This document shows positions 27,800-58,570 of a stretch of DNA of 64,000 nucleotides, in pieces. The notes below the pieces were generated by a model. It had not been told where the DNA came from and made no database searches. It saw only the letters and a program-made list of their open reading frames with translations. The translations under genes were made by a program, and so were the position numbers. The DNA comes from Macrostomum lignano (lineage: Eukaryota), in the NCBI GenBank assembly GCA_002269645.1, contig NIVC01001699.1:61138-125137 (forward strand), written 5' to 3'. Numbering within the stretch: position 1 is the stretch's first letter; the number at the start of each line of letters is the position of its first letter.

Positions 27800-28390
27800 G
27801 GCTACCGGACATTTCCCCTCCGGCGTTTCCCCTCCGGACATTTCCCCTCCGGAAATTTCCCATCCAGCTATAACGAAATAACAGAGCTTTTTTAGAACAT
27901 GCCAAAAAGAAGTTTTGCACGCATGTACGTCACATCCATGTAGTTATGCTGTTAGATCGCTTTTATTTTAAAAATTATGTAAGTAAAAAGTGAGAGTAGA
28001 TGGTTTTATTATATTTTATTATAGGTTTTGTTATAATAAAATTATAATATAATATATTATTATTGTCTTTATTATTAATATATAAAAAATTTTTATATAA
28101 TATTATTATTAAATTATTATATTATTTTGTATATTATTATTTTTATTATTATTATACTATAATATTATACTATTACTATATTATTACATTTATATATACA
28201 CTTATATACATTTATATATATACATGCAACTTATGTTCTCTTTGGACATGTCCGAAGGCACTGTTATTTCGTTATAGATGAAGGGGAAATGTCCGGAGGG
28301 GAAATGTCCGGAGGGGAAATGTCCGGAGGGGAAATGTCCGGAGGGGAAATGTCCGGAGGGGAAACGCCGGAGGGGAAATGTCCGTAAGCG
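27800..28390. mobile_element. Mutator-like (MULE) MITE with a perfect 9-bp TSD
   Basis: TSD cattattac at 27791-27799 and 28391-28399; TIR ggctaccggacatttcccc vs revcomp cgcttacggacatttcccc; subterminal cggacatttcccctc repeats; AT-rich core. Confidence 0.88.
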
Positions 28391-30042: not shown

Positions 30043-32100
<2,058 letters not shown>

Positions 32101-32154
32101 TATTCAAACAGAAATTAATGCGTTTTTATCAGAGCAAAGCGAAACCAATCTTAC

Positions 32155-32777: not shown

Positions 32778-35700
32778 GTGTTCTGTCATCTGCTGGCATC
32801 TAACTGTCATTTCTGTCATCTGCTGGCATCTAACTGCCATTTCTGTCATCTGCTGGCATCTAACTGTCATTTCTGTCATCTGCTGGCATCTAACTGCCAT
32901 TTCTGTCATCTGCTGGCATCTAACTGCCATTTCTGTCATCTGCTGGCATCTAACTGCCATTTCTGTCATCTGCTGGCATCTAACTGCCATTTCTGTCATC
33001 TGCTGGCATCTAACTGCCATTTCTGTCATCTGCTGGCATCTAACTGCCATTTCTGTCATCTTCTGGCATCTAACCGCCATTTCTGTCTTCTTCTGACATC
33101 TAACCACCATTTCTGTCATCTACTAGCATCTAACCGCCATTTCTGTCATCTGCTGGCATCTAACTGCCATTTCTGTCACCTTCTGGCATTTAACTGCCAT
33201 TTCTGTCATCTACTGGCATCTAACTGCCATTTCTGTCATCTGCTGGCATCTAACTGCCATTTCTGTCATCTTCTGGCATCTAACCGCCATTTCTGTTATC
33301 TACTAGCATCTAACTGCCATTTCTGTCATCTACAGGCATCTAACTGCCATTTCTGTCATCTGCTGGCATCTAACTGCCATTTCTGTCATCTGCTGGCATC
33401 TAACTGCCATTTCTGTCATCTGCTGGCATCTAACTGCCATTTCTGTCATCTGCTGGCATGTATCTGCCACTTCTGTCATCTGCTGGCATCTAACTGCCAT
33501 TTCTGTCATCTTCTGGCATCTAACCGCCATTTCTGTCTTCTTCTGACATCTAACCACCATTTCTGTCATCTACTAGCATCTAACCGCCATTTCTGTCATC
33601 TGCTGGCATCTAACTGCCATTTCTGTCACCTTCTGGCATTTAACTGCCATTTCTGTCATCTACTGGCATCTAACTGCCATTTCTGTCATCTGCTGGCATC
33701 TAACTGCCATTTCTGTCATCTTCTGGCATCTAACCGCCATTTCTGTTATCTACTAGCATCTAACTGCCATTTCTGTCATCTACAGGCATCTAACTGCCAT
33801 TTCTGTCATCTGCTGGCATCTAACTGCCATTTCTGTCATCTGCTGGCATCTAACTGCCATTTCTGTCATCTGCTGGCATCTAACTGCTATTTCTGTCATC
33901 TGCTGGCATCTAACTGCCATTTCTGTCATCTGCTGGCATCTAACTGCCATTTCTGTCATCTTCTGGCATCTAACCGCCATTTCTGTCTTCTTCTGACATC
34001 TAACCACCATTTCTGTCATCTACTAGCATCTAACCGCCATTTCTGTCATCTGCTGGCATCTAACTGCCATTTCTGTCACCTTCTGGCATTTAACTGCCAT
34101 TTCTGTCATCTACTGGCATCTAACTGCCATTTCTGTCATCTGCTGGCATCTAACTGCCATTTCTGTCATCTTCTGGCATCTAACCGCCATTTCTGTTATC
34201 TACTAGCATCTAACTGCCATTTCTGTCATCTACTAGCATCTAACTGCCATTTCTGTCATCTGCTGGCATCTAACTGCCATTTCTGTCATCTGCTGGCATC
34301 TAACTGCCATTTCTGTCATCTGCTGGCATCTAACTGCCATTTCTGTCATCTGCTGGCATCTAACTGCCATTTCTGTCATCTGCTGGCATGTATCTGCCAT
34401 TTCTGTCATCTACAGGCATCTAACTGCCATTTCTGTCATCTACTAGCATCTAACTGCCATTTCTGTCATCTACAGTCATCTAACTGCCATTTCTGTCATC
34501 TGCTGGCATCTAACTGCCATTTCTGTCATCTACAGGCATCTAACTGCCATTTCTGTCATCTACTAGCATCTAACTGCCATTTCTGTCATCTACAGTCATC
34601 TAACTGCCATTTCTGTCATCTGCTGGCATCTAACTGCCATTTCTGTCATCTGCTGGCATCTAACCGCCATTTCTGTTATCTACTAGCATCTAACTGCCAT
34701 TTCTGTCATCTGCTGGCATCTAACTGCCATTTCTGTCATCTGCTGGCATCTAACTGCCATTTCTGTCATCTACAGGCATCTAACTGCCATTTCTGTCATC
34801 TACTAGCATCTAACTGCCATTTCTGTCATCTGCTGGCATCTAACTGCCATTTCTGTCATCTGCTGGCATCTAACTGCCATTTCTGTCATCTACAGGCATC
34901 TAACTGCCATTTCTGTCATCTACTAGCATCTAACTGCCATTTCTGTCATCTGCTGGCATCTAACTGCCATTTCTGTCATCTGCTGGCATCTAACTGCCAT
35001 TTCTGTCATCTGCTGGCATCTAACTGCCATTTCTGTCATCTACTAGCATCTAACTGCCATTTCTGTCATCTACTAGCATCTAACTGCCATTTCTGTCATC
35101 TACAGTCATCTAACTGCCATTTCTGTCATCTGCTGGCATCTAACTGCCGTTTCTGTCATCTTCTGGCATCTAACTGCCATTTCTGTCATCTACTGGCATC
35201 TAACTGCCATTTCTGTCATCTTCTGGAATCTAACCGCCACTTCTGTCATCTGCTGGCATCCAACTGCCATTTCTGTCATCTACTAGCATCTAACTGCCAT
35301 TTCTGTCATCTGCTAGCATCTAACTGCCATTTCTGTCATCTGCTGGCATCTAACTGCCATTTCTGTCATCTTCTGGCATCTAACCGCCATTTCTGTCTTC
35401 TTCTGACATCTAACCACCATTTCTGTCATCTACTAGCATCTAACCGCCATTTCTGTCATCTGCTGGCATCTAACTGCCATTTCTGTCATCTTCTGGCATC
35501 TAACCGCCATTTCTGTCATCTACTAGCATCTAACTGCCATTTCTGTCATCTACAGGCATCTAACTGCCATTTCTGTCATCTACTAGCATCTAACTGCCAT
35601 TTCTGTCATCTACAGGCATCTATCTGCCACTTCTGACATCTGCTGGCATCTAACTGCCATTTCTGTCATCTACTAGCATCTAACTGCCATTTCTGTCATC

Positions 35701-38390
35701 TGCTGGCATCTAACTGCCATTTCTGTCATCTGCTGGCATGTATGTGCCATTTCTGTCATCTGCTGGCATCTAACTGCCATTTCTGTCATCTACAGGCATC
35801 TAACTGCCATTTCTGTCATCTACTAGCATCTAACTGCCATTTCTGTCATCTGCTGGCATCTAACTGCCATTTCTGTCATCTGCTGGCATCTAACTGCCAT
35901 TTCTGTCATCTGCTGGCATCTAACTGCCATTTCTGTCATCTGCTGACATGTATCTGCCATTTCTGTCATCTACTAGCATCTAACTGCCATTTCTGTCATC
36001 TACTAGCATCTAACTGCCATTTCTGTCATCTACAGTCATCTAACTGCCATTTCTGTCATCTGCTGGCATCTAACTGCCGTTTCTGTCATCTTCTGGCATC
36101 TAACTGCCATTTCTGTCATCTACTGGCATCTAACTGCCATTTCTGTCATCTTCTGGCATCTAACCGCCACTTCTGTCATCTGCTGGCATCCAACTGCCAT
36201 TTCTGTCATCTACTAGCATCTAACTGCCATTTCTGTCATCTGCTAACATCTAACTGCCATTTCTGTCATCTGCTGGCATCTAACTGCCATTTCTGTCATC
36301 TACTAGCATCTAACTGCCATTTCTGTCATCTACTAGCATCTAACTGCCATTTCTGTCATCTGCTGGCATGTATGTGCCATTTCTGTCATCTGCTGGCATG
36401 TATCTGCCACTTCTGTCATCTGCTGGCATCTAACTGCCATTTCTGTCATCTACAGGCATCTAACTGCCATTTCTGTCATCTGCTGGCATTTAACTACCAT
36501 TTCTGTCATCTACTAGCATCTAACTGCCATTTCTGTCATCTACTACAGTCATCTAACTGCCATTTCTGTCACCTTCTGGCATTTAACTGCCATTTCTGTC
36601 ATCTACTGGCATCTAACTGCCATTTCTGTCATCTGCTGGCATCTAACTGCCATTTCTGTCATCTTCTGGCATCTAACCGCCATTTCTGTTATCTACTAGC
36701 ATCTAACTGCCATTTCTGTCATCTGCTAGCATCTAACTGCCATTTCTGTCATCTGCTGGCATCTAACTGCCATTTCTGTCATCTACTAGCATCTAACTGC
36801 CATTTCTGTCATCTACTAGCATCTAACTGCCATTTCTGTCATCTGCTGGCATGTATGTGCCATTTCTGTCATCTGCTGGCATGTATCTGCCACTTCTGTC
36901 ATCTGCTGGCATCTAACTGCCATTTCTGTCATCTGCTGGCATCTAACTGCCATTTCTGTCATCTACAGGCTTCTAACTGCCATTTCTGTCATCTGCTGGC
37001 ATCTAACTACCATTTCTGTCATCTACTAGCATCTAACTGCCATTTCTGTTATCTACTGGCATCTAACTGCCATTTCTGTTATCTACTGGCATCTAACTGC
37101 CATTTCTGTCATCTGCTGGCATCTAACTGCCATTTCTGTCATCTACTAGCATCTAACTGCCATTTCTGTCATCTTCTGGCATCTAACCGCCATTTCTGTC
37201 ATCTACTAGCATCTAACTGCCATTTCTGTCATCTACTAGCATCTAACTGCCATTTCTGTCATCTACAGGCATCTATCTGCCACTTCTGACATCTGCTGGC
37301 ATCTAACTGCCATTTCTGTCATCTACTAGCATCTAACTGCCATTTCTGTCATCTGCTGGCATCTAACTGCCATTTCTGTCATCTGCTGGCATGTATGTGC
37401 CATTTCTGTCATCTGCTGGCATCTAACTGCCATTTCTGTCATCTACTAGCATCTAACTGCCATTTCTGTCATCTACTAGCATCTAACTGCCATTTCTGTC
37501 ATCTGCTGGCATGTATGTGCCATTTCTGTCATCTGCTGGCATGTATCTGCCACTTCTGTCATCTGCTGGCATCTAACTGCCATTTCTGTCATCTGCTGGC
37601 ATCTAACTGCCATTTCTGTCATCTACAGGCTTCTAACTGCCATTTCTGTCATCTGCTGGCATCTAACTACCATTTCTGTCATCTACTAGCATCTAACTGC
37701 CATTTCTGTTATCTACTGGCATCTAACTGCCATTTCTGTTATCTACTGGCATCTAACTGCCATTTCTGTCATCTGCTGGCATCTAACTGCCATTTCTGTC
37801 ATCTACTAGCATCTAACTGCCATTTCTGTCATCTTCTGGCATCTAACCGCCATTTCTGTCATCTACTAGCATCTAACTGCCATTTCTGTCATCTACTAGC
37901 ATCTAACTGCCATTTCTGTCATCTACAGGCATCTATCTGCCACTTCTGACATCTGCTGGCATCTAACTGCCATTTCTGTCATCTACTAGCATCTAACTGC
38001 CATTTCTGTCATCTGCTGGCATCTAACTGCCATTTCTGTCATCTGCTGGCATGTATGTGCCATTTCTGTCATCTGCTGGCATCTAACTGCCATTTCTGTC
38101 ATCTACAGGCATCTAACTGCCATTTCTGTCATCTACTAGCATCTAACTGCCATTTCTGTCATCTGCTGGCATCTAACTGCCATTTCTGTCATCTGCTGGC
38201 ATCTAACTGCCATTTCTGTCATCTACTAGCATCTAACTGCCATTTCTGTCATCTACTAGCATCTAACTGCCATTGCTGTCATCTGCTGGCATCTAACCGC
38301 CACTTCTGTCATCTACTGGCATCTAACTGCCATTTCTGTCATCTACTGGCATCTATCTGCCACTTCTGTCATCTACTGGCATCTAGCTAA
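32778..38390. repeat. 5.6-kb satellite of a 30-bp unit (ttctgtcatctgctggcatctaactgccat) with higher-order repeats
   Basis: About 187 units; variant patterns recur at 450-bp and 660-bp spacing. Confidence 0.98.
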
Positions 38391-41889: not shown

Positions 41890-43669
41890 GGAGAGAAATG
41901 AGGAGTCCTCACTCGCTGCAGGGTGGTCCGCGTGGTTCGAACCTGATTCACTCTCCATCTATAGCTCCACCTCTGGCAAACTTTTGCCCAGCATGTTTGC
42001 CTGGTTATTCGACTGCCAGCAGATCGAGTCCCCTAGCAGAACCCTATCACACTCTCTGCGCCTCAGCGTCAGTCTCTGAGAGTAAAACAAATCCATGCGA
42101 ATTTCATAACTGGTTAAAGCTCGTCCACACCGCCATCAAGTAAGGCCAAAGTTCGTGTGATCATACCGTCATTCCTTTATAAATCGGTCGTGTGATTTGA
42201 TGACAGAGCGTGAATCAGCCTTAATTTGTGAGCGATCAGTCAGTGATGTCACCATTCCACTTCGATTTTCTTCACTACTCTCCTTCCTGTTTCCTTTCTC
42301 TGCCATTTTCTCCACTCCTTTCCCCATCAGCTCCTCGACTCCCTTCCAGCTGCATTCATCTTTCGATTTCTCTTATGTCTTCAACTCTTCTCTTTCTCTC
42401 TCTAATAACGTCTCTGCATCCGGCCTCTACTCGCTCCTTCATCCTTGCTGTCTCAGCTGCTGGCATTGAGGTCCAGCACGCAGTGGTCAGAATGTGTCGC
42501 CATCCCGTCCGCCCCCGGAGACTCTCGATCAGTCACTCGCAACCTCCCGGATGACTGATTGCGGACGATTCGTAGAGCCGCGAAACAACAAGGCAAGTCT
42601 CTCCGCAGCTCTCGTCTCTGATAGGCATCTCGCGTTGGACAGCCGGCCCACTTGTCCCAACGCATTAATTACTTAGGGAAGCTTCTTCTAGGAGAAGGAA
42701 ATGCAACTTTTGCTCCGCCGCTGTCCCGCAGCTGGGTCTCTCTGCCTGGAGGGAGTCCTCGCCTTGCGGGTGGGCCCGAATAAAAACTTTCTTTACTACC
42801 TACATCTTGCCTCTTTCCTTTTCCGGGTGATCTCTCGACAGGCGCGCAAAAAGACAGCTGCATGCTTCGTGACTTGTTGTGTTCCTTACGCGCGTAAACA
42901 TGGATAGTGTGCATGGATACGGGGCGATAAAGTTGGGCAATGTTAATACGCACACGCAGACCAACCGTGTGCACCATTAGAAAGTGTGAGCGCACGGCAG
43001 GAGCCAGCTGCTGCAGATAACACATACGGGCAAGTCAATGTCAGAGAGAGTTATTAACTTATAGCCTGTATGCTCGCAGTCAATGTGCTTCGATTTCCAC
43101 GGTTACCCGTCGGAGTTTTTCATCAATAGCTCGTAGACTATTAGCTTAATTAGCCTTCCTTATTAGCTTAATCAGGGAGGGGAGCCCGTTCTAGGGTCTT
43201 TACCTTAAAGCATTATTGAGCCACTTTTTTCGTTCGTCTGGTAGAAGCTGTGCGCCCTTTTGCATACTATATTTGTCAGACCGATCGCGTGCTTGGAAGG
43301 AAAGGGATGGCAGAGGAGGTCGCTAGAAAGACGCTGGTAGAAGCGCTGCGATTTTAAAGGAAAAAAGGTAAAAACTAAAACGAGGCGAATGGAAATGTCA
43401 AAGCTGCATGTTGCTGAGAGCGGCTTTACCGGCTTGAAATTTACGCAAGCCGAAAGTGGCCATGCTTGGATGGCATCAAAGAAGCGTTCGGCAGTAGAGC
43501 AGACTGGGTGCACTGTATTTTTACTTTTATTTCAACAGAAAAAATAGAATATATAGACATTCAGTATAATATAGTCTGGCAATGAGAGAATTTTTTTCAG
43601 ATATAGGGCTACGAGTACAGCTGGATCTACTTTATTTTTTTACATTTGCACGTCACTCAATCGTCGTGC

Positions 43670-44792
43670 GAAAAGTATCAAGGATCTTGCTCAATCACAT
43701 CACTCTCATCGGTACCAATCGAGCAGGATCTTGCTCAATCACACCACTCTCATCGGTACCAATCGGACAGGATCTTGCTCAATCACATCACCCTCATCGG
43801 TACCAATCGAGCAGGATCTTGCTCAATCACATCACTCTCATCGGTACCAATCGAGCAGGATCTTGCTCAATCACATCACCCTCATCGGTACCAATCGAGC
43901 AGGATCTTGCTCAATCACATCACTCTCATCGGTACCAATCGGACAGGATCTTGCTCAATCACATCACTCTCATCGGTACCAATCGGACAGGATCTTGCTC
44001 AATCACATCACCCTCATCGGTACCAATCGGACAGGATCTTGCTCAATCACATCACCCTCATCGGTACCAATCGAGCAGGATCTTGCTCAATCACATCACT
44101 CTCATCGGTACCAATCGAGCAGGATCTTGCTCAATCACATCACCCTCATCGGTACCAATCGAGCAGGATCTTGCTCAATCACATCACTCTCATCGGTACC
44201 AATCGGACAGGATCTTGCTCAATCACATCACTCTCATCAGTACCAATCGGACAGGATCTTGCTCAATCACATCACCCTCATCGGTACCAATCGAGCAGGA
44301 TCTTGCTCAATCACATCACTCTCATCGGTACCAATCGGACAGGATCTTGCTCAATCACATCACTCTCATCGGTACCAATCGAGCAGGATCTTGCTCAATC
44401 ACATCACCCTCATCGGTACCAATCGGACAGGATCTTGCTCAATCACATCACTCTCATCGGTACCAATCGGACAGGATCTTGCTCAATCACATCACTCTCA
44501 TCAGTACCAATCGGACAGGATCTTGCTCAATCACATCACCCTCATCGGTACCAATCGAGCAGGATCTTGCTCAATCACATCACTCTCATCGGTACCAATC
44601 GGACAGGATCTTGCTCAATCACATCACCCTCATCAGTACCAATCGGACAGGATCTTGCTCAATCACATCACCCTCATCGGTACCAATCGAGCAGGATCTT
44701 GCTCAATCACTTCACCCTCATCGGTACCAATCGGACAGGATCTTGCTCAATCACATCACCCTCATCGGTACCAATCGAGCAGGATCTTGCTG
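43670..44792. repeat. 44-bp minisatellite derived from the 3' end of the serotonin receptor CDS
   Basis: Unit aggatcttgctcaatcacatcac(t/c)ctcatcggtaccaatcg(ag/ga)c shares aggatcttgct and tc(a/g)tcggta with the coding sequence at 44855-44891. Confidence 0.95.
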
Positions 44793-44854
44793 AATCAGTT
44801 ACGGTTACCCTCGTCGGTACAAAACGAACATCAGGACCTTGTCAAACCGACGAG

Positions 44855-45771
44855 TCACCTTCGTCGGTAACGTCCAAATAGGATCTTGCTAAATGCGCTG
44901 CGAAAGTCCGGCGAGAAGATGGTGTATATCACTGGATTGAGCAGGCTGTTTGTGTAGCCCAACCACTGGATCAACGAGTGCCCAGTCTCGGAGATGAGGT
45001 CGGTGCACAGCGGCGAATAGAAGGGACAGACTATGGCTCGAACGAAGAAGGGGAACCAGCAGAACAGAAAGCAGCCTGTAATTATCGCCAGGGTTCTTGC
45101 TGCCTTCCTTTCTCGTTTCTGTTCCAGCCTCTCGCGCTGCATAGCCGCTTTGGACTGGATGGTGATGCGCTCCTGAGCTTCTGCTCGACCGTTTTGTTGT
45201 AGCTGTTTCTGCTGCTGTTTTTTCTGCTTTGAGTTCAGCTTTTTAGTAGTAGCGCTAAATGACGTCGTTTGACAGGGACCTGCGCCACTGGACACTTCCG
45301 GCGTGTGGTCGGAATCGGATGTGGATTTTTTCGCCGCCTGCTGCTGCTGCTGCTGCGCCGTCGCAGCGGCAGTTGCCGCGGCCGAAGCCGCCGGCTGGCT
45401 TGGCTTGAAGGCTTTCCGACGAATTCTTTTGCGAGCGGCGTGATAAATTCTCAGGTAGATGCCGATCATGAACAGCATGGGCAGGTAGAAGGCGCCAACA
45501 GTTGAGAATACGGTGTAAGCTGGCGATTCGTTGATGCGACACTCGTCCGGCTCTTTCCTCATGCGCCAGAAGCGCGCCGGGGCGCTGATCGCGGCGCTGA
45601 TGATCCAAATGGCGGCGATCATCAGGCCGATGCGGCGTCCGGTGCGGGTTCTGATGTAGTTGATGTTGGTGACTGCCCAGTAGCGATCAACCGCTATGCC
45701 AACCAGGTGCAGGATCGAAGCTGTGCAGCACAGCACGTCTAGGCAGGTCCACAGGTCGCAGAGGTGCACAC
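44855..45771 (-). CDS. 5-HT1-type serotonin receptor, exon 3 (TM3-TM7, stop)
   Basis: CDLWTCLDVLCCTASILHLVGIAVDRYW (TM3 Asp, DRY), STVGAFYLP, ERKAARTLAIITG..CWFPFF, WLGYTNSLLNPVIY; ctacag acceptor, phase 1. Confidence 0.95.
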
Positions 45772-45889
45772 CTGTAGAGTAGGGCCGATTTATTAGTGCT
45801 TTATACCTGCAATCTTCGGCTCAAAATTGCTTAAGAATATTTAAACCGCTGCTCGTTTCACTGTGCCCACATTTGTTGCTGTAACGCCA

Positions 45890-46690
45890 CTGTGCCAGCG
45901 CCAGGCCTCACCACGTCACTTTGCCAGCGCCAGTCCTCCCCCCCGCCACTCTGCCAGTGCCAGTCCCCACCCCGCCACTCTGCCAGCGCCAGTCCTCACC
46001 CCCGCCACTCTGCCAGTGCCAGTCCCCACCCCGCCACTCTGCCAGGGCCAGTCCCCACCCCGCCACTCTGCCAGGGCCAGTCCTCACCCCCGCCACTCTG
46101 TCAGGGCCAGTCCCCACCCCGCCACTCTGCCAGGGCCAGTCCTCACCCCCGCCACTCTGCCAGTGCCAGTCCCCACCCTCGCCACTCTGCCAGGGCCAGT
46201 CCTCACCCCCGCCACTCTGCCGGTGCCAGTCCCCACCCCGCCACTCTGCCAGTGCCAGTCCCCACTCCGCCACTCTGCCAGTGCCAGTCCCCACCCTCGC
46301 CACTCTGCCAGTGCCAGTCCCCACCCCGCCACTCTGCCAGCGCCAGTCCCCACCCCGCCACTCTGCCAGTGCCAGTCCCCACTCCGCCACTCTGCCAGTG
46401 CCAGTCCCCACCCTCGCCACTCTGCCAGTGCCAGTCCCCACCCCGCCACTCTGCCAGCGCCAGTCCCCACCCTCGCCACTCTGCCAGTGCCAGTCCCCAC
46501 CCCGCCACTCTGCCAGTGCCAGTCCCCACCTCGCCACTCTGCCAGCGCCAGTCCCCACCCTCGCCACTCTGCCAGTGCCAGTCCCCACCCCGCCACTCTG
46601 CCAGTGCCAGTCCCACCCCGCCACTCTGCCAGTGCCAGTCCCCACCCCGCCACTCTGCCAGTGCCAGTCCCACCCCGCCACTCTGCCCTG
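45890..46690. repeat. 29/30-bp GC-rich minisatellite (cgccactctgccagtgccagtccccaccc) in GPCR intron 2
   Basis: Read directly. Confidence 0.96.
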
Positions 46691-48224
46691 TGCCTGTCTG
46701 TGTACTTATAAAACCATAAGGGCCAGGTTAATAAATTTTTAGTTTTTTTAACGACTTTTAAACGTATTAAAAATTGTTTTTTAAGCCCGCCGCTTCCCCA
46801 TAAGCATCGTAAATAAGATCAAATTTCAAATTATTTTGCGCATTTTCCTGCATAACAGGCAACAGCGGCAAGCCTCTTTTGCCATGCTTAGCCATAACGC
46901 TCGTAAGTCTGGAAATAAGGGAGGAAAGGATTATCGGAACACTTGAGTTTATGCGCAGTTAGAAATGTATCATAACGATGCTAGTTATTATATAGAAATA
47001 CGGTCTCCTATCCATTTGCATTTCAGCCCAATAGTTCGCTTTAACTACCGTGGTCTCATTCAGCAGACTATTATTGCCATCTGCCCCCCCCCCCACTGCC
47101 GGCTGCTCTTCAATTGGATTGTAGTAAAATATAAATTAAATATATTTTTATAAGTGCGCGCAAGCCACTGCCTGGTCAGTGACAGCCCAAGGCATCTGAT
47201 TTACCCCCCCCCCCACGGCCAGCAGATCAACTGACGGAGTTCAATCAGCTGGTCCCATCGCTTCCCAGTCTGGGCAGGTCCTCCTGTGTCCAACCGTCGC
47301 ATTCCAGCCGCTTTTGAAGCCTCATCTCTCGATCCCCCTTTCCCCTCCTGTTATTCCAGCTTATACCCAGCACCCACTACCCTCTCGGCTTGGTCTAATT
47401 CAGCCCCCCTCGGCTAAACTTTTTTGTCCCAAAGGCCGCCTCGGTCCGGCACGGCATCAGGGATAGGTGGGATCGGGGATTAAAGCTACTCCAGTCCGGA
47501 GGCAAAGGCTTGGCGAAACGGGTTAGGAAACAGGGAACAAACCAAAGCGAAAGCTGATCCCCTGGGCTGGGAGGATCAGGAAACGCGTTTATATAGCCTA
47601 ATTCTTTCTTTCCCTCTGCTGGACTACGCCAGATATTTTTGCTGGCACAGCTTGCAGGAGGCCCCGACAGCTTTGAAAAGGGGGAGAACAGCGGCCGGAG
47701 ACGCTCCTTCTTGTGTGTCCCAGCTTTAGTCTTCTTGCCCTCCCGTTGTTGTCCCGGTCGCCCCCTTCCCTATTTGGTCTGGCCGGCGGTGTAGCGGGCG
47801 ACCTGACGCTGCCTGCATGCGCCGCTCTCCATCGCCGCCTCCAACGCCAGCTATTTTTTACGTCTGGGCGTCCCCCGCCAACGCGACTGGCGATGCTTGA
47901 AAAGAATTAGTAAGGAAACAGGCGAGAGGGAGAGAGGGGGTTGAGGGAGAGGTATGGGGTGGAAATTCCGACTGATGATGACGAGGCCTGGCTGCGTTGC
48001 GATGGTGTTCCGCTGTCTATATAGCTGGTACTTTCGCCTTTGTTTTACACCGAATACGCTGACGCTGGTAAATGACGCGGTGCTAGGCTGACTGACAAGG
48101 AAAAGCACTTGAGGCGCCTAACAGTGTTGGTGAAAATCGATTGAGTGGTGATGGACCCTGCATCCAGGCATTGGACAGATTCGACCCAATAACAGTACTG
48201 CATGAAAATTGCCTTGTGATGTGA

Positions 48225-48735
48225 CTGACTCAGTTTGAGACTGATAGAGCAGTGAGTGACTCAGTTTGAGACTGATAGAGCAGTGAGTGACTCAGTTTGA
48301 GACTGATAGAGCAGTGAGTGACTCAGTTTGAGACTGATAGAGCAGTGAGTGACTCAGTTTGAGACTGATAGAGCAGTGAGTGACTCAGTTTGAGACTGAT
48401 AGAGCAGTGAGTGACTCAGTTTGAGACTGATAGAGCAGTGAGTGACTCAGTTTGAGACTGATAGAGCAGTGAGTGACTCAGTTTGAGACTGATAGAGCAG
48501 TGAGTGACTCAGTTTGAGACTGATAGAGCAGTGAGTGACTCAGTTTGAGACTGATAGAGCAGTGAGTGACTCAGTTTGAGACTGATAGAGCAGTGAGTGA
48601 CTCAGTTTGAGACTGATAGAGCAGTGAGTGACTCAGTTTGAGACTGATAGAGCAGTGAGTGACTCAGTTTGAGACTGATAGAGCAGTGACTGACTCAGTT
48701 TGAGACTGATAGAGCAGTAAGTGACTCAGTTTGAG
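48225..48735. repeat. 31-bp homogeneous minisatellite (gactcagtttgagactgatagagcagtgagt) in GPCR intron 2
   Basis: Read directly. Confidence 0.97.
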
Positions 48736-48786
48736 AATACGGTTAAGCAGTGAGAAACTCAGTTTTCAAGCGAATTAACATTTTAC

Positions 48787-48895
48787 CGAGCCACCAGACT
48801 TTGGACATCTCCTTCAGGGCGCAGATGGGCATCACCAGGGTGGCCACCATCAGGTCGGCGACAGCCAGGCTCAGGATCAGGTAGTTCGACACGCT
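48787..48895 (-). CDS. 5-HT1-type serotonin receptor, exon 2 (TM2)
   Basis: SVSNYLILSLAVADLMVATLVMPICALKEMSKVWWL; tttcag / gtaaaa. Confidence 0.94.
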
Positions 48896-48919
48896 CTGAA
48901 AAATTAATGTAAAGCTTTA

Positions 48920-49160
48920 TCCAGGTAGCTTAGGTGTAAGAAGGGAGAAGTCCTGCGTTCAGTTCCACTGCCTAAAGATGTGAAAGTCTGGGCCTCTGTA
49001 CACCCTGTGAGATCGATCGACTATAGATTTGATTTCTGCGTCCGCTGGTTCCTGAAGCCCTTGCGCTTGATGGGCAGACTATGTAGTACGAGCATACAGT
49101 TCACTTTTAACTGGAAGGGGCCGCAGCCCTGAGGAGCGCCAGTGAAACTTAACTTGGTGC
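48920..49160 (+). mobile_element. Possible decayed tRNA-derived SINE-like element ending in a degenerate hammerhead
   Basis: A-box-like tagcttaggtg (48926), B-box-like cgttcagttcc (48956) with short spacing; CTGAGGA...GAAA core at 49129-49147. Confidence 0.3.
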
Positions 49161-49164
49161 CCGC

Positions 49165-50015
49165 GCCTGTCTCTTGGTGGGGCGCCACTGTCTCTTAGTG
49201 GGGCGCCACTGTCTCTTGGTGGGGCGCCACTGTCTCTTAGTGAGGCGCCACTGTCTCTTAGTGAGGCGCCACTGTCTCTTAGTGAGGCGCCACTGTCTCT
49301 TAGTGAGGCGCCACTGTCTCTTAGTGATGCGCCACTGTCTCTTAGTGAGGCGCCACTGTCTCTTAGTGAGGCGCCACTGTCTCTTAGTGAGGCGCCACTG
49401 TCTCTTAGTGAGGCGCCACTGTCTCTTAGTGAGGCGCCACTGTCTCTTAGTGAGGCGCCACTGTCTCTTAGTGAGGCGCCACTGTCTCTTAGTGAGGCGC
49501 CACTGTCTCTTAGTGAGGCGCCACTGTCTCTTAGTGAGGCGCCACTGTCTCTTAGTGAGGCGCCACTGTCTCTTAGTGAGGCGCCACTGTCTCTTAGTGA
49601 GGCGCCACTGTCTCTTAGTGAGGCGCCACTGTCTCTTAGTGAGGCGCCACTGTCTCTTAGTGAGGCGCCACTGTCTCTTAGTGAGGCGCCACTGTCTCTT
49701 AGTGAGGCGCCACTGTCTCTTAGTGAGGCGCCACTGTCTCTTAGTGAGGCGCCACTGTCTCTTAGTGAGGCGCCACTGTCTCTTAGTGAGGCGCCACTGT
49801 CTCTTAGTGAGGCGCCACTGTCTCTTAGTGAGGCGCCACTGTCTCTTAGTGAGGCGCCACTGTCTCTTAGTGAGGCGCCACTGTCTCTTAGTGAGGCGCC
49901 ACTGTCTCTTAGTGAGGCGCCACTGTCTCTTAGTGAGGCGCCACTGTCTCTTAGTGAGGCGCCACTGTCTCTTAGTGAGGCGCCACTGTCTCTTAGTGAG
50001 CCGCCACTGTCTCTT
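49165..50015. repeat. 21-bp homogeneous minisatellite (gcgccactgtctcttagtgag), ~40 copies, GPCR intron 1
   Basis: Read directly. Confidence 0.98.
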
Positions 50016-50847
50016 GGATTGGAGTTTATGCTAATCAGGGAAAATCCCTCCTATGGAGATGGAGGGGCAGAGGTAGGCAGGTGACTGAAAGTTTGCCCAC
50101 GACCCTCTGTTTGGTTTGCGGTTTCGTAATTCGACAATTAGACAATTTCCGGACGCGAATTTGCATCATCCTGGATGCTGCACCTCAGCTCCCGATATTA
50201 ATTAATCAAGATGGGACCGGTTTGGCATCTATGAGTACCTCTCTGAGTACCGCCCTCCCATAGTATAGTAAGGGCTGGCAAAATTGATGAACAATGAACG
50301 GTCTGGCACCGCAGGAAGATAATTTAATATAATTAAGCTGCTCCTGCAAGCAGACGGGCCGGTGTCAATCAAGCCTCGCTGGCTGGGTGCATCTGCGTGG
50401 CAAATGCACCCAGCCAGCATGTCCGCCGGCCATCCGGCCATCTGGAGAGGCCAGGCCGGGACCCGAGCCAAGCTGCAGGTCGGCCGTCGTTTTCCCACAT
50501 CTCCCTTCTCCTGCTCCCCCCCCCAGTTGCCCCTGGGGCTGATGTGGCATCTTAGGCACGAACTATTGCCAACCGATTAGTAATCAGCTGGTGCAAAACT
50601 GCTTGTGAATTTTCCGGGACACAGTTGCGAACACTTTTCTCCATTCGGCACCCCAAGGGGTTTATTAATATTTAGCTGACAGAAAATTCCAATGCTGGGG
50701 GCAGGATAATTTTCTTGAACTGCCTATTCGCTTCTTCTCTCATAACTAACTCGGTTGGAAGGGAAAATGCCGCAACTCATGCTTAATTGTGTATCATAGT
50801 TGGGGCCAGCTTGAGTTTGAATAGCCACTGCTGTCTGAGTTCATCGG

Positions 50848-52525
50848 TTGAGACACCGGTTGGACATCAGATAGAGACTCGGTTGAGACACCGGTGGGAC
50901 ATCAGATAGAGACTCGGTTGAGACACCGGTGGGACATCAGACAGAGACTCGGTTGAGACACCGGTGGGACATCAGACAGAGACTCGGTTGAGACACCGGT
51001 GGGACATCAGACAGAGACTCGGTTGAGACACCGGTGGGACATCAGACAGAGACTCGGTTGAGACACCGGTTGGACATCAGATAGAGACTCGGTTGAGACA
51101 CCGGTTGGACATCAGATAGAGACTCGGTTGAGACACCGGTGGGACATCAGATAGAGACTCGGTTGAGACACCGATTGAACATCAGATAGAGACTCGGTTG
51201 AGACACCGGTTGGACATCAGATAGAGACTCGGTTGAGACACCGGTGGGACATCAGACAGAGACTCAGTTGAGACACCGGTTGGACATCAGATAGAGACTC
51301 GGTTGAGACACCGGTGGGACAGCAGCTAGAGAGACTCGGTTGAGACACCGGTGGGACAGCAGCTAGAGAGACTCGGTTGAGACACCGATTGAACATCAGA
51401 TAGAGACACGGTTGAGACACCGGTGGGACATCAGACAGAGACTCGGTTGAGACACCGATTGAACATCAGATAGAGACTCGGTTGAGACACCGGTTGAACA
51501 TCAGATAGAGACTCGGTTGAGACACCGGTGGGACAGCAGCTAGAGAGACTCGGTTGAGACACCGGTTGGACATCAGATAGAGAGACTCAGTTGAGACACC
51601 GGGGTGGGACATCAGCTAGAGAGACTCAGTTGAGACACCGGGGTGGGACATCAGCTAGAGAGACTCAGTTGAGACACCGGTGGGACATCAGACAGAGACT
51701 CGGTTGAGACACCGATAGGACATCAGATAGAGACTCGGTTGAGACACCGGTTGGACATCAGATAGAGACTCGGTTGAGACACCGATTGAACATCAGATAG
51801 AGACTCGGTTGAGACACCGGTGGGACATCAGACAGAGACTCGGTTGAGACACCGGTTGGACATCAGATAGAGACTCGGTTGAGACACCGGTGGGACATCA
51901 GACAGAGACTCGGTTGAGACACCGGTTGGACATCAGATAGAGACTCGGTTGAGACACCGATTGAACATCAGATAGAGACTCGGTTGAGACACCGGTGGGA
52001 CATCAGACAGAGACTCAGTTGAGACACCGGTTGGACATCAGATAGAGACTCGGTTGAGACACCGGTGGGACAGCAGCTAGAGAGACTCGGTTGAGACACC
52101 GGTGGGACAGCAGCTAGAGAGACTCGGTTGAGACACCGATTGAACATCAGATAGAGACTCGGTTGAGACACCGGTTGAACATCAGATAGAGACTCGGTTG
52201 AGACACCGGTGGGACAGCAGCTAGAGAGACTCGGTTGAGACACCGGTTGGACATCAGATAGAGACTCGGTTGAGACACCGGTTGAACGTCAGATAGAGAC
52301 TCGGTTGAGATACCGGTGGGACGGGAGCTAGAGACTCGGTTGAGACACCGGTTGGACATCAGATAGAGACTCGGTTGAGATACCGGTTGGACATCAGCTA
52401 AGAGAGACTCAGTTGAGACACCGGTGGGACGGCAGCTAGAGAGACTTGGTTGAGACACCGGTGGGACAGCAGCTAGAGAGACTCGGTTGAGACACCGGTG
52501 GGACAGCAGCTAGAGAGACTCAGTC
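50848..52525. repeat. ~35-bp minisatellite (gagactcggttgagacaccggtgggacatcagata), GPCR intron 1
   Basis: 35-bp period between 50881 and 50916. Confidence 0.97.
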
Positions 52526-53454
52526 GCTCATAGTGATATATCTCATTTGCACCGCTGGCAAATTCAATAGTATCCGGCTAAAACGTACTCAAAAGTGTAG
52601 CAGCAACTTCACTCCGCGGCTCAAGTGTCGCTAATCTCATTAGTCGCTGAGACTACTAATCTCCCTAGCTCTCGAACCCCTACTCAAAGCTGGACTAACT
52701 CGCAGCAATGTATGGAACTCAATCGACCAATAAATAGGGACTGACCTATCTGAAGTGAGCAGTGTTTTATGACCTGCATTCGGATTTTCATATTTGGTAT
52801 TTAGTAGATATAGGAGTAGCGCAGCAGCTGTGCTCAGGTAGCTTCCCCTTTAAAGTAAGCCGGCTTGCATAGCAACTGAGCAGCCAAAGCTACACACCTC
52901 CCCTCCCCACCCCCGGAGTTCATCCCAAGGGACGCTTCGTCTCGAATTGGTCGAGTCTTTTATCTGGGAGGCTTTTAAAGCAACAAAATGTTCTGTATAG
53001 CCTATGATGACGACTGCTTGATCCGCCCCCTGTTTTGCATTCACCTTGTCTCCCTGCCTGCAATTCCGGCCCGCCTCTTCCTCCGCCGCTAATTTGCACT
53101 AAAAGCTGTCGAATTTCTCCTCTTTACAGCCAAAGAGACTTTGCTTTTAGTTCCCCCATCCCGCTTTGATCCTCAGTCCCCAGCCGCGCCTCGTTCTGTT
53201 TGTCTTTGTCTCCCTTTTCTCTGTGAAGCCGATCGGTGACCCTAAATCCTCGAGGGCGGCCCAGCCGCCCGGTTCTCATGTGGAATCGCAAGAGCTTGGG
53301 TTTTTAGCGGGAGCCTTTGTAGATTTTTGTCAAGTAAAAGAAACAAAAACTTTTCTTCAATACGCTGAATAGCGCTTGGTATTGATCTCTTTGCAGATTG
53401 CTTTCAAATCCGTACGTTTCACTGCACTTTTTCCATATCCAACCGACAGCCATG

Positions 53455-54547
53455 CAAGATCCCCAGTTGCTGGGCCACCAGCCTCCCAGATCCTAAGTTT
53501 CTGGCCCCCGCAGCCTCCCAGATCCTCAGTTGCTGGGCCAGCCTCCCAGATCCTCAGTTGCTGGGCCAGCCTCCAAGATCCTCAGTTGCTGGGCCAGCCT
53601 CCCAGATCCTCAGTTGTTGGCTCAGCCTCCCAGATCCTTGCTGGCCCAGCCTCCCAGATCCTCAGTTGCTGGGCCAGCCTCCCAGATCCTCAGTTGCTGG
53701 GTCAGCCTCCCAAATCCTCAGTTGCTGGCCAGCCTCCCAGATGCTCAGCTGCTGGGTCAGCCTCCCAGATCCTCAGTTGCTGGGCCAGCCTCCCAGATCC
53801 TCAGTTGCTGGGCCAGCCTCCCAGATACTCAGTTGCTGGGCCAGCCTCCCAGATCCTCAGCTGCTGGGTCAGCCTCCCAGATCCTCATTTGCTGGGCCAG
53901 CCTCCCAGATCCTCAGTTGCTGGGCCAGCCTCCCAGATCCTCAGTTGCTGGGCCAGCCTCCAAGATCCTCAGTTGCTGGGCCAGCCTCCCAGATCCTCAG
54001 TTGTTGGCTCAGCCTCCCAGATCCTTGCTGGCCCAGCCTCCCAGATCCTCAGTTGCTGGGCCAGCCTCCCAGATCCTCAGTTGCTGGGCCAGCCTCCCAG
54101 ATCCTCAGCTGCTGGGTCAGCCTCCCAAATCCTCAGTTGCTGGCCAGCCTCCCAGATGCTCAGCTGCTGGGTCAGCCTCCCAGATCCTCAGTTGCTGGGC
54201 CAGCCTCCCAGATCCTCAGTTGCTGGGCCAGCCTCCCAGATCCTCAGTTGCTGGGCCAGCCTCCAAGATCCTCAGTTGCTGGGCCAGCCTCCCAGATCCT
54301 CAGTTGTTGGCTCAGCCTCCCAGATCCTTGCTGGCCCAGCCTCCCAGATCCTCAGTTGCTGGGCCAGCCTCCCAGATCCTCAGTTGCTGGGCCAGCCTCC
54401 CAGATCCTCAGCTGCTGGGTCAGCCTCCCAAATCCTCAGTTGCTGGCCAGCCTCCCAGATGCTCAGCTGCTGGGTCAGCCTCCCAGATCCTCAGTTGCTG
54501 GGCCAGCCTCCCAGATCCTCAGTTGCTGGGCCAGCCTCCCAGATCCC
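53455..54547. repeat. 28-bp minisatellite (cagcctcccagatcctcagttgctgggc) with higher-order structure, next to the GPCR exon 1 donor
   Basis: Read directly; same unit at 58190-58385. Confidence 0.97.
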
Positions 54548-54561
54548 TAATCCGGTCTCAC

Positions 54562-54831
54562 CTGCAAGTTTCTCTCCAAGATGATGGCCGCCACCACAAA
54601 CACGTTGCCAACAATGGTGCAGAGAATCATGATGCCCAGCAGCAGGCTGGTCATGACAATCTGCAGTGGCCCAAATCTCGGCTGGAACCCGATGGACATC
54701 GCTGACGTCGCCGTCGTCCCGTTGTCGTAGGTGGTGTTCGCGTCCAGGCTGGAGTTCAGGCCCGCAGGGTAGGAGCTGGCGTTGCTGGCCGCAGCGGCCG
54801 CCATGCCGAAGGTGGCGTTGGGAGTGAGCAT
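54562..54831 (-). CDS. 5-HT1-type serotonin receptor, exon 1 (N-terminus with NxS/T sites, TM1)
   Basis: MLTPNATF...SLLLGIMILCTIVGNVFVVAAIILERNLQ|gtgag. Joined CDS is 1296 nt, 431 aa. Confidence 0.92.
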
Positions 54832-55669
54832 GCCCTGCTGCCAGTTCTGTCAAATTCGTGGAAGAGTCGCGGTAGTCAGCCCAGTCTCGTCAAGAACTTG
54901 CCGCCGTCGCCGCGGACCCCTCGGATTTGTTTCCTTTTTTAATGGCGCCCGCGCAGTGCGGTACGGACTCCGCTTTGCTTACAGAGTGGTGGCAGCGGCT
55001 GGCCAATCAGATGCCAGATGGTCTCTCCCACTATAGCTAACCCCCCCCCCTGCCCACTTGCTTGTTGGTAGCTCGCGACAGTATCTGATTCTATCTAGTA
55101 TTAGCGCCCAAATTTAAGCTATATGACAAGTGATGCGATAAGTGATGGCAGTTTCTATCTGTCTGCCAATCAAGGTCAAGATCAAGTTTTTACGTTAGTA
55201 AAGTGTATACAATGCGGTTGATATAGGTGGATAGCTATGGCACCTAGGCACTAACAGCTGCTTCTGCATTTCTGTCTGTCTCCTTTCTTACTTTTGCTTT
55301 CATTAATGCAAAGTCGCAGCAACATCAGCAGCAGCAGCAGCAGCAGCAGCGGAGTCCATGTAGCCAGGCTGTGCAATTGCCCTCATTCGCTGGCTGTTGC
55401 TTTGACCTGCTTGAACTGCCTGGCGCCAACTGCAGCTGCTGCCCAGGAGCCAACTGGCAGACCCAATGCCGCTCAGGAATGTTATTTCTGCGGCCAGGTT
55501 CGGCTTAATACCGGGTCGCCTGCGCCTCGCTAGCAGTCGTGAGAGTGGCTCGGCAGAAAACAGGCTTTTAGTTCAGGAAATAAAGAAGCAATTGCTTGGA
55601 AAGCAGAGGCCTGGTGAGCGTCTGAAAAACAAAAACTGTGAATGGAAACTTAGAAAGGCGAACCCACCG

Positions 55670-57955: not shown

Positions 57956-58189
57956 GATGGCGCGAACACTTTTGTATAACCTACATAATGTAAGTTAAGA
58001 AGGATTATTCAAACTAGCAAGCAGAATTCTACACGCTTCTTTGACAACCAGCATAATTAAAAACATAATTTTTGAAAATGCGATTTGCAATAAACTTTTT
58101 TTTCAATTTTTTCGAAGCTGATTTACAGATAATTTCGGGAATTTCGATTTTATCTGAGAGCCAGATACACCTACCACCCCCTTTCAGAC

Positions 58190-58385
58190 CCTCAGTTGCT
58201 GGGCTAGCCTCCCAGATCCTCAGTTGCTGGGCCAGCCTCCCAGATCCTCATTTGCTGGGCCAGCCTCCCAGATCCTCATTTGCTGGGCCAGCCTCCCAGA
58301 TCCCCAGTTACTGGGCCAGCCTCCCAGATCCTCATTTGCTGGGCCAGCCTCCCAGATCCCCAGTTACTGGGCCAGCTTCCGTGAT
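58190..58385. repeat. Short array of the 28-bp cagcctcccagatcctca unit overlapping the putative iGluR stop
   Basis: Same unit as 53455-54547. Confidence 0.92.
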
Positions 58386-58570
58386 CCCAGCCACTTCGTT
58401 CTCAAAGCATGAATCAGCGCAGTCGCACCAACCTTGGTGGGGTCCGGCGACAGCATTTGGTTGGGCAGGAATTCCACCCAGCCCTGCACTCGCACCCTGA
58501 TGCCGCTGGGCGTCACGTTTGTGACCTCGGCCTGATATGGCTTCATGAACTCAAGGCGAGAGTTCACCTT
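58364..58570 (-). CDS. Putative terminal exon of the iGluR-like gene (cytoplasmic tail)
   Basis: GC-rich open frame KVNSRLEFMKPYQAEVTNVTPSGIRVRVQGWVEFLP...LAQ* with a ttccag acceptor in phase 0. No family motif, so the link to the gene is inferred. Confidence 0.45.
   Translation of the reverse strand, partial: KVNSRLEFMKPYQAEVTNVTPSGIRVRVQGWVEFLPNQMLSPDPTKVGATALIHALRTKWLGSRKLAQ

What the first reader, a model, noticed from the sequence alone, without database searches (positions are those of the whole stretch)
43670..44891. A minisatellite built from the last codons and stop of the serotonin receptor
Seen: on the gene strand the CDS ends AGC AAG ATC CTA TTT GGA CGT TAC CGA CGA AGG TGA (SKILFGRYRRR*). 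The next units are 47 bp (from the coding copy to acaaggtcctg...tac cga cga ggg taa) and 52 bp long. They are followed by ~25 homogenised 44-bp units reading AGC AAG ATC CTG ... TAC CGA TGA GGG TGA. This is a gradient from coding sequence through proto-repeats to a homogenised array. Established: F...KIL is the conserved helix 8 of aminergic GPCRs. Inference: the coding sequence is ancestral and seeded the array. The 3' UTR is then a run of stop-containing copies of the C-terminus, and unequal crossover could swap alternative tails (e.g. SKILLDWYR*) onto the receptor.
Basis: partly seen in the sequence, partly recalled or inferred. Interest (0 to 1): 0.75.

Follow-up and report, generated by a model that had tools for sequence, protein, structure and literature searches.

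The report
Minisatellite copied from receptor gene tail
In the flatworm Macrostomum lignano, the 1.1-kb block of 44-bp repeats after a serotonin-receptor gene is a run of decayed copies of the gene's last codons and stop codon: a clear but ordinary example of a tandem repeat born from local sequence in a very repeat-rich genome.

Summary
On the minus strand, a 5-HT1-like receptor gene of Macrostomum lignano ends SKILFGRYRRR* (stop 44857-44855). It is followed by two degenerate units (48 and 51 nt), 25 exact-length 44-bp units (44791-43692, 95.6% alike), and a last degenerate unit that runs into an AATAAA. The coding tail and both edge units match the unit far better than any of 20,000 random window segments.

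KILFG is present in 135 of 144 homologues across phyla. A 50%-identical homologue uses almost the same codons and has no repeat downstream. The unit occurs nowhere else in the window. So a tandem duplication spanning the stop codon seeded the array, and the first copy stayed the working gene end.

Two things are not shown. First, the array may not be a 3' UTR: two deposited gene models splice it out from a donor that overlaps the stop codon. Second, there is no sign that unequal crossover swaps tails onto the receptor.

Context lowers the surprise. Tandem arrays cover 45% of this window and a published 15% of the genome. This is a new member of a known kind, with modest interest.

The parts
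44855..45771 (-). Last coding exon of a 5-HT1-like aminergic GPCR (TM3/DRY through NPVIY and helix 8 to SKILFGRYRRR*). The acceptor AG is at 45773-45772.
   Evidence: ORF. Pfam 7tm_1 E=1.4e-44. 97-99% identical to UniProt M. lignano GPCR models and 39-47% to named 5-hydroxytryptamine receptors of molluscs, annelids and nemerteans.
44843..44890 (-). Unit U0: the progenitor copy. It is the last 11 codons plus the stop (44890-44855) and 12 nt of downstream sequence.
   Evidence: 33/48 alignment columns identical to the unit consensus. 0/20,000 random segments score as well.
44855..44857 (-). Stop codon TGA. The GT at 44858-44857 is the splice donor used by two deposited gene models.
44846..44868 (-). 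8-bp hairpin ACCGACGA / TCGTCGGT. Its 7-nt loop AGGTGAC holds the stop codon and the candidate donor. It is present only in the coding copy.
   Evidence: DNA fold -9.1 to -11.4 kcal/mol, z -3.1 to -3.45, 1-3 of 200 shuffles as good. Array units give z >= 0.
44792..44842 (-). Unit U0': a 51-nt transitional (proto-repeat) unit ending TAC CGA CGA GGG TAA.
   Evidence: 34/52 columns identical to the consensus and 36/53 to U0. 0/20,000 random segments match, even without the 11-nt anchor.
43692..44791 (-). Homogenised core: 25 units of exactly 44 nt, 8 sequence types, mean pairwise identity 95.6%.
43643..43691 (-). Uend: 11 nt identical to the unit start, then a degenerate unit that keeps the CDS-like CGACGA.
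   Evidence: 35/50 columns identical to the consensus, 0/20,000 random segments. Without the anchor 58/20,000.
43631..43636 (-). AATAAA polyadenylation-signal consensus, 45 nt after the last repeat base.
   Evidence: Sequence read directly. Its use was not tested.
43346..44858 (-). Candidate GT-AG intron of gene model P0004 (donor AAG|GTGACT, acceptor ttttttcctttaaaatcgcag|C). It would remove the stop codon and the whole array and add SASTSVFLATSSAIPFLPSTRSV*.
   Evidence: The P0004 tail maps to 43353-43279. Splice sites were read. No RNA evidence is available here.

Best explanation
The array was born locally. A tandem duplication of about 48 bp took in the last 11 codons, the stop codon and about 12 nt downstream of a 5-HT1-like receptor gene.

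The first copy carries an intact reading frame and stop, so the receptor was unharmed and that copy stayed under purifying selection. The downstream copies were non-coding and drifted (for example CGACGA to CGATGA). One lineage of them was amplified and kept alike by replication slippage or unequal exchange, giving 25 units of 44 bp. The two outermost copies escaped homogenisation and remain as degenerate edge units.

The array most likely has no function of its own. Its effect is to put about 1.2 kb between the stop codon and the first AATAAA, or to lie in an intron if the donor at the stop codon is used.

Shown: the similarity, the register, the ancestry of the coding tail, and the absence of the unit elsewhere in the window. 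Inferred: the mechanism of duplication and amplification, and neutrality.
For: - Array anatomy.
- In-register similarity of the CDS tail and both edge units to the unit: 0 of 20,000 random segments or shuffles reach it.
- U0' is intermediate. It shares about 6 states with the core and 2 with the CDS copy.
- The coding tail is ancestral. A KILFG-type motif is in 135/144 homologues and KILFG[KR]Y in 109. M. lignano paralogues end KILFGRYRRRGFR, KILFGRYHRRGY and KILFGRNHRLRRR.
- A 50%-identical homologue from another sample encodes the motif as AAGATCCTATTCGGA (here AAGATCCTATTTGGA). Its 255 nt after the stop hold no copy of the tail and no comparable array.
- The unit was found only here. All 25 window matches lie in the array, with 0 expected by chance. 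It is unrelated to the other 30 array units of the window. There is no match in JGI metagenome contigs. No protein among 5.8 billion, UniProt M. lignano models included, matches its open plus-strand translation.
- All four combinations of the two main variant sites occur, which fits exchange between units.
- The (XY)nX layout, 25 units plus an 11-nt partial unit, is what the two published minisatellite-birth models predict, as summarised in PMC3389668.
- Background: tandem arrays cover 45% of the window and a published 15% of the genome (PMC5730564).
Against: - No M. lignano DNA outside this window could be searched, nor any sister species. 'Locus-specific' therefore rests on 64 kb plus indirect negatives.
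- The coding copy and the core differ at about 31% of aligned columns. The middle of the alignment is soft; without the 11-nt anchor the support is about 8e-4 rather than below 5e-5.
- Neutrality is assumed, not tested.
- Four units fold better as RNA than shuffles do (z -4). This may only reflect repetition.
- Whether the array is in the mature mRNA is unknown.
Confidence: 0.8

Rival explanations
1. Chance resemblance: an unrelated minisatellite happens to sit next to the stop codon and happens to look like the last codons.
For: Arrays are so dense here (48 in 64 kb) that one lying within 100 bp of an exon end is expected. Other arrays of this gene start 17-110 bp from exon borders.
Against: In-register alignment scores of U0, U0' and Uend are never reached by 20,000 random window segments or shuffles. 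This holds largely even without the shared 11-mer. U0 and U0' are also alike (36/53, 0/20,000).
Confidence: 0.01
2. Invasion: a pre-existing or dispersed (transposon-borne) repeat spread into the gene and now supplies the receptor's C-terminus.
For: Some unit families in the window are dispersed, for example the same 28-bp unit at 53457-54546 and 58185-58387. The genome outside the window could not be searched.
Against: The tail KILFG[KR]YR..RRR is conserved across phyla and in four M. lignano paralogues. A distant homologue without any array uses nearly the same codons. The unit is absent from the rest of the window and from the searchable collections.
Confidence: 0.04
3. The array is functional. 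It could be a 3' UTR regulatory module (25 copies of a binding site or structure). It could be a set of decoy 5' splice sites and stops that tunes the choice between the short tail (RRR*) and a spliced, extended tail. It could be a reservoir for alternative C-termini through unequal exchange. This concerns present use and is compatible with the local origin.
For: The stop codon lies inside a good donor (AAG|GTGACT), in the loop of an 8-bp hairpin. Two deposited models use that donor. About half of the units keep AGG|GTGATG. Four units fold with z -4 as RNA.
Against: There is no RNA or population evidence. The unit length is not a multiple of 3. The hairpin is not kept in the units. Unit variants look like free drift plus homogenisation. 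Comparable arrays fill the introns and flanks of the same gene. The extended tails of the models have no counterpart in any homologue. All five deposited models keep the normal tail.
Confidence: 0.1
4. Assembly artefact: the array, or its copy number, was produced by long-read assembly of a repetitive region.
For: The public M. lignano assemblies are repeat-rich and redundant (PMC5730564). Deposited models from the older assembly carry frameshifts relative to this window.
Against: The units are exactly 44 nt with structured variants and degenerate edges, as in a real array. The gene models that splice across this interval imply an insert between the stop codon and 43345 in the other assembly too. 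The origin argument depends on the edges, not on copy number.
Confidence: 0.03

Closest known systems
[quoted passage not shown]
   Same: There is a single-copy progenitor still in place at one border. The array has the form (XY)n plus a partial X (11 nt). The terminal unit is incomplete. The unit length falls in the 10-100 bp range.
   Different: The progenitor here is the end of a conserved coding sequence with its stop codon, so the direction of copying can be read from protein conservation. Which of the two models applies cannot be decided, because the ancestral single-copy state is not available.
Arrays with a homogenised core and degenerate edge units (general behaviour of satellite and minisatellite ends; from my own knowledge, not tested against a paper here)
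   Same: The core units are 95.6% alike. The two units at the CDS side and the unit at the far side are only about 65-70% like the core.
   Different: One edge unit is held in place by purifying selection on a protein, not merely by escape from homogenisation.
VNTRs in monoamine-signalling genes of humans: the 40-bp VNTR in the 3' UTR of SLC6A3 (DAT1) and the 48-bp VNTR in exon 3 of DRD4 (from my own knowledge)
   Same: A 40-50-bp minisatellite lies in or next to the coding sequence of an aminergic signalling gene. In DRD4 the gene is an aminergic GPCR.
   Different: Those arrays are not known to be copies of the stop-codon region. The DRD4 repeat is in frame and translated. No polymorphism or phenotype data exist for the flatworm array.
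Invertebrate 5-HT1-type serotonin receptors (the host gene)
   Same: It has a 7tm_1 domain, a DRY motif, a long third loop, NPxxY, and a short tail ending FxKILFG[KR]YR...RRR like the named 5-HT receptors of molluscs, annelids and nemerteans.
   Different: The ligand has not been tested. It is one of at least four M. lignano paralogues.

Membership tests
Minisatellite / VNTR | Head-to-tail array of units of about 10-100 bp | tested here: met
   44-bp period, 25.4 copies, 94% matches, no indels. 25 exact-length units.
Minisatellite / VNTR | Copy number varies between individuals or lines | not testable with these tools
   Only one haplotype is available. It needs PCR or long reads from several M. 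lignano lines.
Locally born (not transposon-derived) tandem array | A recognisable progenitor copy in the adjoining unique sequence, in register with the array | tested here: met
   U0 (the CDS tail) and U0' are in register. 0/20,000 random segments score as well.
Locally born (not transposon-derived) tandem array | Unit absent from unrelated loci of the genome | tested here: inconclusive
   The unit is absent from the other 62.8 kb of the window, from JGI metagenome contigs and, as a translation, from 5.8 billion proteins. The M. lignano genome itself could not be searched.
Locally born (not transposon-derived) tandem array | (XY)nX layout or incomplete terminal unit, as predicted by the Haber-Louis and Taylor-Breden models | tested here: met
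   The array ends with the first 11 nt of a unit (43691-43681). This is weak evidence, since any array with a non-integer copy number looks like this.
Aminergic GPCR, 5-HT1-like | Rhodopsin-family 7TM domain with DRY and NPxxY motifs and a helix-8 F..F..KIL motif | tested here: met
   Pfam 7tm_1 E=1.4e-44. DRYWAV and NPVIYTIFSPDFRSAFSKILFG were read.
Aminergic GPCR, 5-HT1-like | Closest named relatives are serotonin receptors | tested here: met
   Named hits are 5-hydroxytryptamine receptor, 5-HT1A or HTR1 at 39-47% identity over the whole exon.
Aminergic GPCR, 5-HT1-like | Binds serotonin and signals through Gi/o | not testable with these tools
   Needs heterologous expression and a ligand assay.
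3' UTR repeat | The array is present in the mature, polyadenylated mRNA | not testable with these tools
   An AATAAA lies 45 nt after the array. However, two deposited models splice the array out. No transcript data are reachable here.

The most novel reading that the evidence does not exclude
The stop codon of this receptor sits inside a usable 5' splice site held in a hairpin loop, and the array is a run of 25 copies of that stop-plus-donor motif. The array could then act on the choice between the conserved short tail (RRR*) and a spliced, extended tail. More broadly, M. lignano may generate minisatellites from local unique sequence, coding ends included, at an unusually high rate. In that case this locus would be a dated series (coding copy, then proto-units, then homogenised core) for measuring that process.
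Probability: 0.08. Interest if true: 0.55.

Novelty: new member of a known kind. Interest (0 to 1): 0.3.

Why it matters
The origin of minisatellites is hard to study because the single-copy progenitor is usually gone (PMC3389668). Here the progenitor is frozen in place by selection on a conserved receptor tail. Direction, unit boundaries and the order of changes can therefore be read directly.

The locus also illustrates a simple rule. A tandem duplication that spans a stop codon is harmless to the protein, so such arrays can build up at gene ends.

For annotators of M. lignano it is a practical warning. Arrays sit against nearly every exon border of this gene, and deposited gene models translate them or splice around them.

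It does not change what is known about how minisatellites or serotonin receptors work.

Tried and rejected
- **Orthologous or homeologous DNA.** I looked for it by searching the protein collection with the whole last exon and with its last 94 residues. All M. lignano hits are UniProt-only and have no contigs, so no second M. lignano locus could be read. Two Logan contigs of distant homologues were fetched. Only L002 was useful.
- **Other copies of the unit.** I searched the window, the other array consensus units, JGI metagenome contigs, and the protein collection through the open plus-strand translation. Nothing was found. None of these covers the flatworm genome.
- **A plus-strand gene in the array.** The plus strand is open in all three frames (ORFs of 379-411 aa). 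I rejected it as a gene for three reasons. The unit length is not a multiple of 3. There is no homologue. The Pfam hits have no single stretch that passes and are summed repeats.
- **Rfam.** Nothing meaningful in 43000-45900.
- **Higher-order periodicity.** A 6-unit (264-bp) period looked possible but is not significant (p=0.07).
- **Gradient inside the core.** Only a post-hoc p=0.04 for one variant.
- **Wasik et al. 2015 genome paper.** It could not be read.

Full report
**What the window is.** The last-exon ORF at 45769-44855 on the minus strand is a rhodopsin-family 7TM domain (Pfam 7tm_1, E=1.4e-44). Its best matches are UniProt models from the free-living flatworm Macrostomum lignano (97-99% identity). 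Next come named 5-hydroxytryptamine receptors of nemerteans, molluscs and annelids at 39-47%.

Mapping the deposited models onto the window places the coding exons at:
- about 55358-55324
- 54847-54563
- 48895-48787
- 45771-44855

. The exon carries DRYWAV, a long third loop, NPVIY, and the helix-8 end FRSAFSKILFGRYRRR*.

**The observation.** TRF reports 43681-44797 with period 44, 25.4 copies, 94% matches and no indels. On the gene strand the layout is:

| Element | Coordinates | Length | Content |
|---|---|---|---|
| U0 | 44890-44843 | 48 nt | Last 11 codons, TGA, 12 nt downstream |
| U0' | 44842-44792 | 51 nt | ...TAC CGA CGA GGG TAA... |
| Core | 44791-43692 | 25 x 44 nt | Homogenised units |
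| Uend | 43691-43643 | 49 nt | 11 nt identical to a unit start, then degenerate |
| AATAAA | 43636-43631 | 6 nt | Polyadenylation-signal consensus |

In the receptor's frame the units read SKILLDWYR*G* or SKILSDWYR*(G/E)*.

**Is it more than chance?** I aligned each edge unit globally and in register to the consensus. The results were 33/48 (U0), 34/52 (U0') and 35/50 (Uend) identical columns, and 36/53 for U0 against U0'. None of 20,000 random segments of the window and none of 20,000 shuffles reached any of these scores. With the shared 11-mer AGCAAGATCCT removed, the fractions were 16/20,000, 0/20,000 and 58/20,000. The resemblance is real.

**Direction of copying.** Among 144 retrieved homologues with an NPxxY motif, 135 have a KILFG-type motif within 30 residues and 109 have KILFG[KR]Y. 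Other M. lignano paralogues end KILFGRYRRRGFR, KILFGRYHRRGY and KILFGRNHRLRRR.

A 50%-identical homologue on a Logan contig (L002) writes the motif AAGATCCTATTCGGA, against AAGATCCTATTTGGA here. Its 255 nt after the stop contain no copy of the tail and no comparable array. The coding tail therefore predates the array.

In a five-way alignment U0' shares about six states with the core against U0. It keeps two U0 states (CGACGA, and the C after GT[G/A]A) that the core has lost. Uend also keeps CGACGA.

**Is the unit specific to this locus?**
- All 25 window matches to a 31-nt unit pattern (up to 3 mismatches) lie in the array, with 0 expected by chance.
- The unit is unrelated to the other 30 array consensus units of the window. 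Three other pairs of arrays are related to each other.
- There is no exact match in JGI metagenome contigs.
- The plus-strand translation, which gene predictors would readily pick up, has no match among 5.8 billion proteins.

The M. lignano genome itself could not be searched, so this point stays open.

**Inside the core.** There are eight unit types with a mean pairwise identity of 95.6%. The main variants are CT/TC at positions 13-14 and G/A at position 32. All four combinations occur, which fits exchange between units. Three units carry a CpG-to-TpG change. The derived A32 is missing from the four units nearest the CDS (p=0.039, post hoc). A six-unit periodicity is not significant (p=0.07). 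Apart from the edges, there is no gradient.

**Context.** TRF arrays cover 45% of the window and 47% of the gene's span. The published genome figure is 15% simple and tandem repeats (PMC5730564). That paper's transcript pipeline explicitly bridges repetitive gaps between ORFs and poly(A) ends.

Arrays begin 17-110 bp from every internal exon border of this gene. Beyond the TRF borders, 5 of the 22 larger arrays have a flank that resembles the unit at p<=0.001, and a few more do so more weakly (p about 0.003-0.03). This is the only array whose edge unit is coding.

A duplication spanning a stop codon leaves the first copy intact, so it is the kind of exon-overlapping array that selection would tolerate. 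That last step is inference.

**Mechanism.** The layout (XY)n plus a partial X matches both published birth models: slippage between short direct repeats, and mispairing at noncontiguous repeats (PMC3389668). I cannot choose between them without the empty site.

The coding copy alone contains an 8-bp hairpin, ACCGACGA/TCGTCGGT, around the stop codon (z about -3.1 to -3.45). A pause at such a structure could have favoured the first duplication. That is conjecture.

**3' UTR or intron?** The AATAAA 45 nt past the array fits a long 3' UTR. However, the stop codon is embedded in AAG|GTGACT. Deposited models P0004 and P0003 splice from exactly there to acceptors at 43346|43345 and 40428|40427. This adds tails that no homologue shares. 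These may be prediction artefacts. No RNA data are reachable with these tools.

**Tail swapping.** This is unsupported. Only 11 nt are identical between the CDS and the unit. All five deposited models of this gene keep SKILFGRYRR. The swapped tail would lose the conserved F-G.

**Verdict.** The functional extrapolations are untested. This is a well-preserved case of minisatellite birth from the stop-codon region of a conserved gene, in a genome where such arrays are everywhere. It is a new member of a known kind, of modest interest.

Noticed in passing
window 1-64000: 48 separate tandem arrays cover 45% of the window. Examples are a 5.6-kb array of a 30-bp unit at 32781-38385 and a 2-kb CTA-rich array at 30043-32102. 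This is three times the published genome average of 15%.
   Followed up: partly
window 44855-55518 (receptor gene): The introns are largely made of minisatellites (45885-46687, 48221-48736, 49167-50015, 50844-52516, 53457-54546). These start 17-110 bp from exon borders. The array at 48221-48736 has degenerate units running to within about 15-20 nt of the donor of the 48895-48787 exon.
   Followed up: partly
window 44846-44868 (minus strand): A perfect 8-bp hairpin ACCGACGA/TCGTCGGT has a loop AGGTGAC that holds the stop codon and a candidate 5' splice site. The 3' arm is an inverted copy of the last codons. Fold z is about -3.1 to -3.45. It is not present in the repeat units.
   Followed up: partly
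window 44858/43345 and 44858/40427 (minus strand): UniProt models P0004 and P0003 splice from a donor overlapping the stop codon to downstream acceptors. This gives extended tails (SASTSVFLATSSAIPFLPSTRSV* and SCYPKVSGFSALTW...) that no homologue shares. They are either real alternative 3' ends or prediction artefacts.
   Followed up: partly
window 45885-46687: The N-terminal 165 or so residues of UniProt model P0004 (GLALAEWRGGDWHWQSGG...) are a translation of the intronic 29-bp minisatellite, which is an annotation artefact. Models P0003 and P0006 also carry frameshifted stretches of the third loop relative to this window.
   Followed up: partly
window 53457-54546 and 58185-58387: The same 28-bp unit (AGATCCTCAGTTGCTGGGCCAGCCTCCC) forms two arrays in the same orientation, one inside the gene's intron and one upstream of the gene. 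At least some unit families are therefore dispersed or segmentally copied.
   Followed up: no
window 27805-27865 / 28282-28384, and 1-1193 / 1232-1316: Two pairs of arrays are reverse complements of each other. The 15-bp pair flanks an AT-rich stretch (28007-28220), like the arms of a foldback-type element.
   Followed up: no
array consensus units across the window: Short motifs recur in otherwise unrelated units: TCTCA/TGAGA in 9 of 31 units and GAGAC/GTCTC in 7 of 31. The maximum count over all 5-mers exceeds shuffled units (p about 0.01).
   Followed up: partly
window 43582-44881 (plus strand): The antisense strand of the array has no stop codon in any frame (ORFs of 403, 411 and 379 aa). 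They have no homologues, and the Pfam hits are summed-repeat artefacts.
   Followed up: yes
proteins P0005 and P0121 (M. lignano paralogue, not in the window): Two models of one paralogue share everything up to FRNAF. One then ends SKILFGRYHRRGY and the other TRLHLIDLLLDSEKAAPLSEQPVQCLMPGSSI. Part of the second tail loosely resembles, by eye only, a reading of window 43440-43400, which hints at conserved sequence downstream of these genes.
   Followed up: no
window 54832-54847 (minus strand): The exon starting at 54847 follows a strong acceptor (ttgacag|AACTGG), with an ATG 13 nt downstream. Trans-splicing is frequent in this species (PMC5730564). The true start may therefore be this ATG rather than the upstream MDSAAAAAAAAD exon of model P0002.
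   Followed up: no
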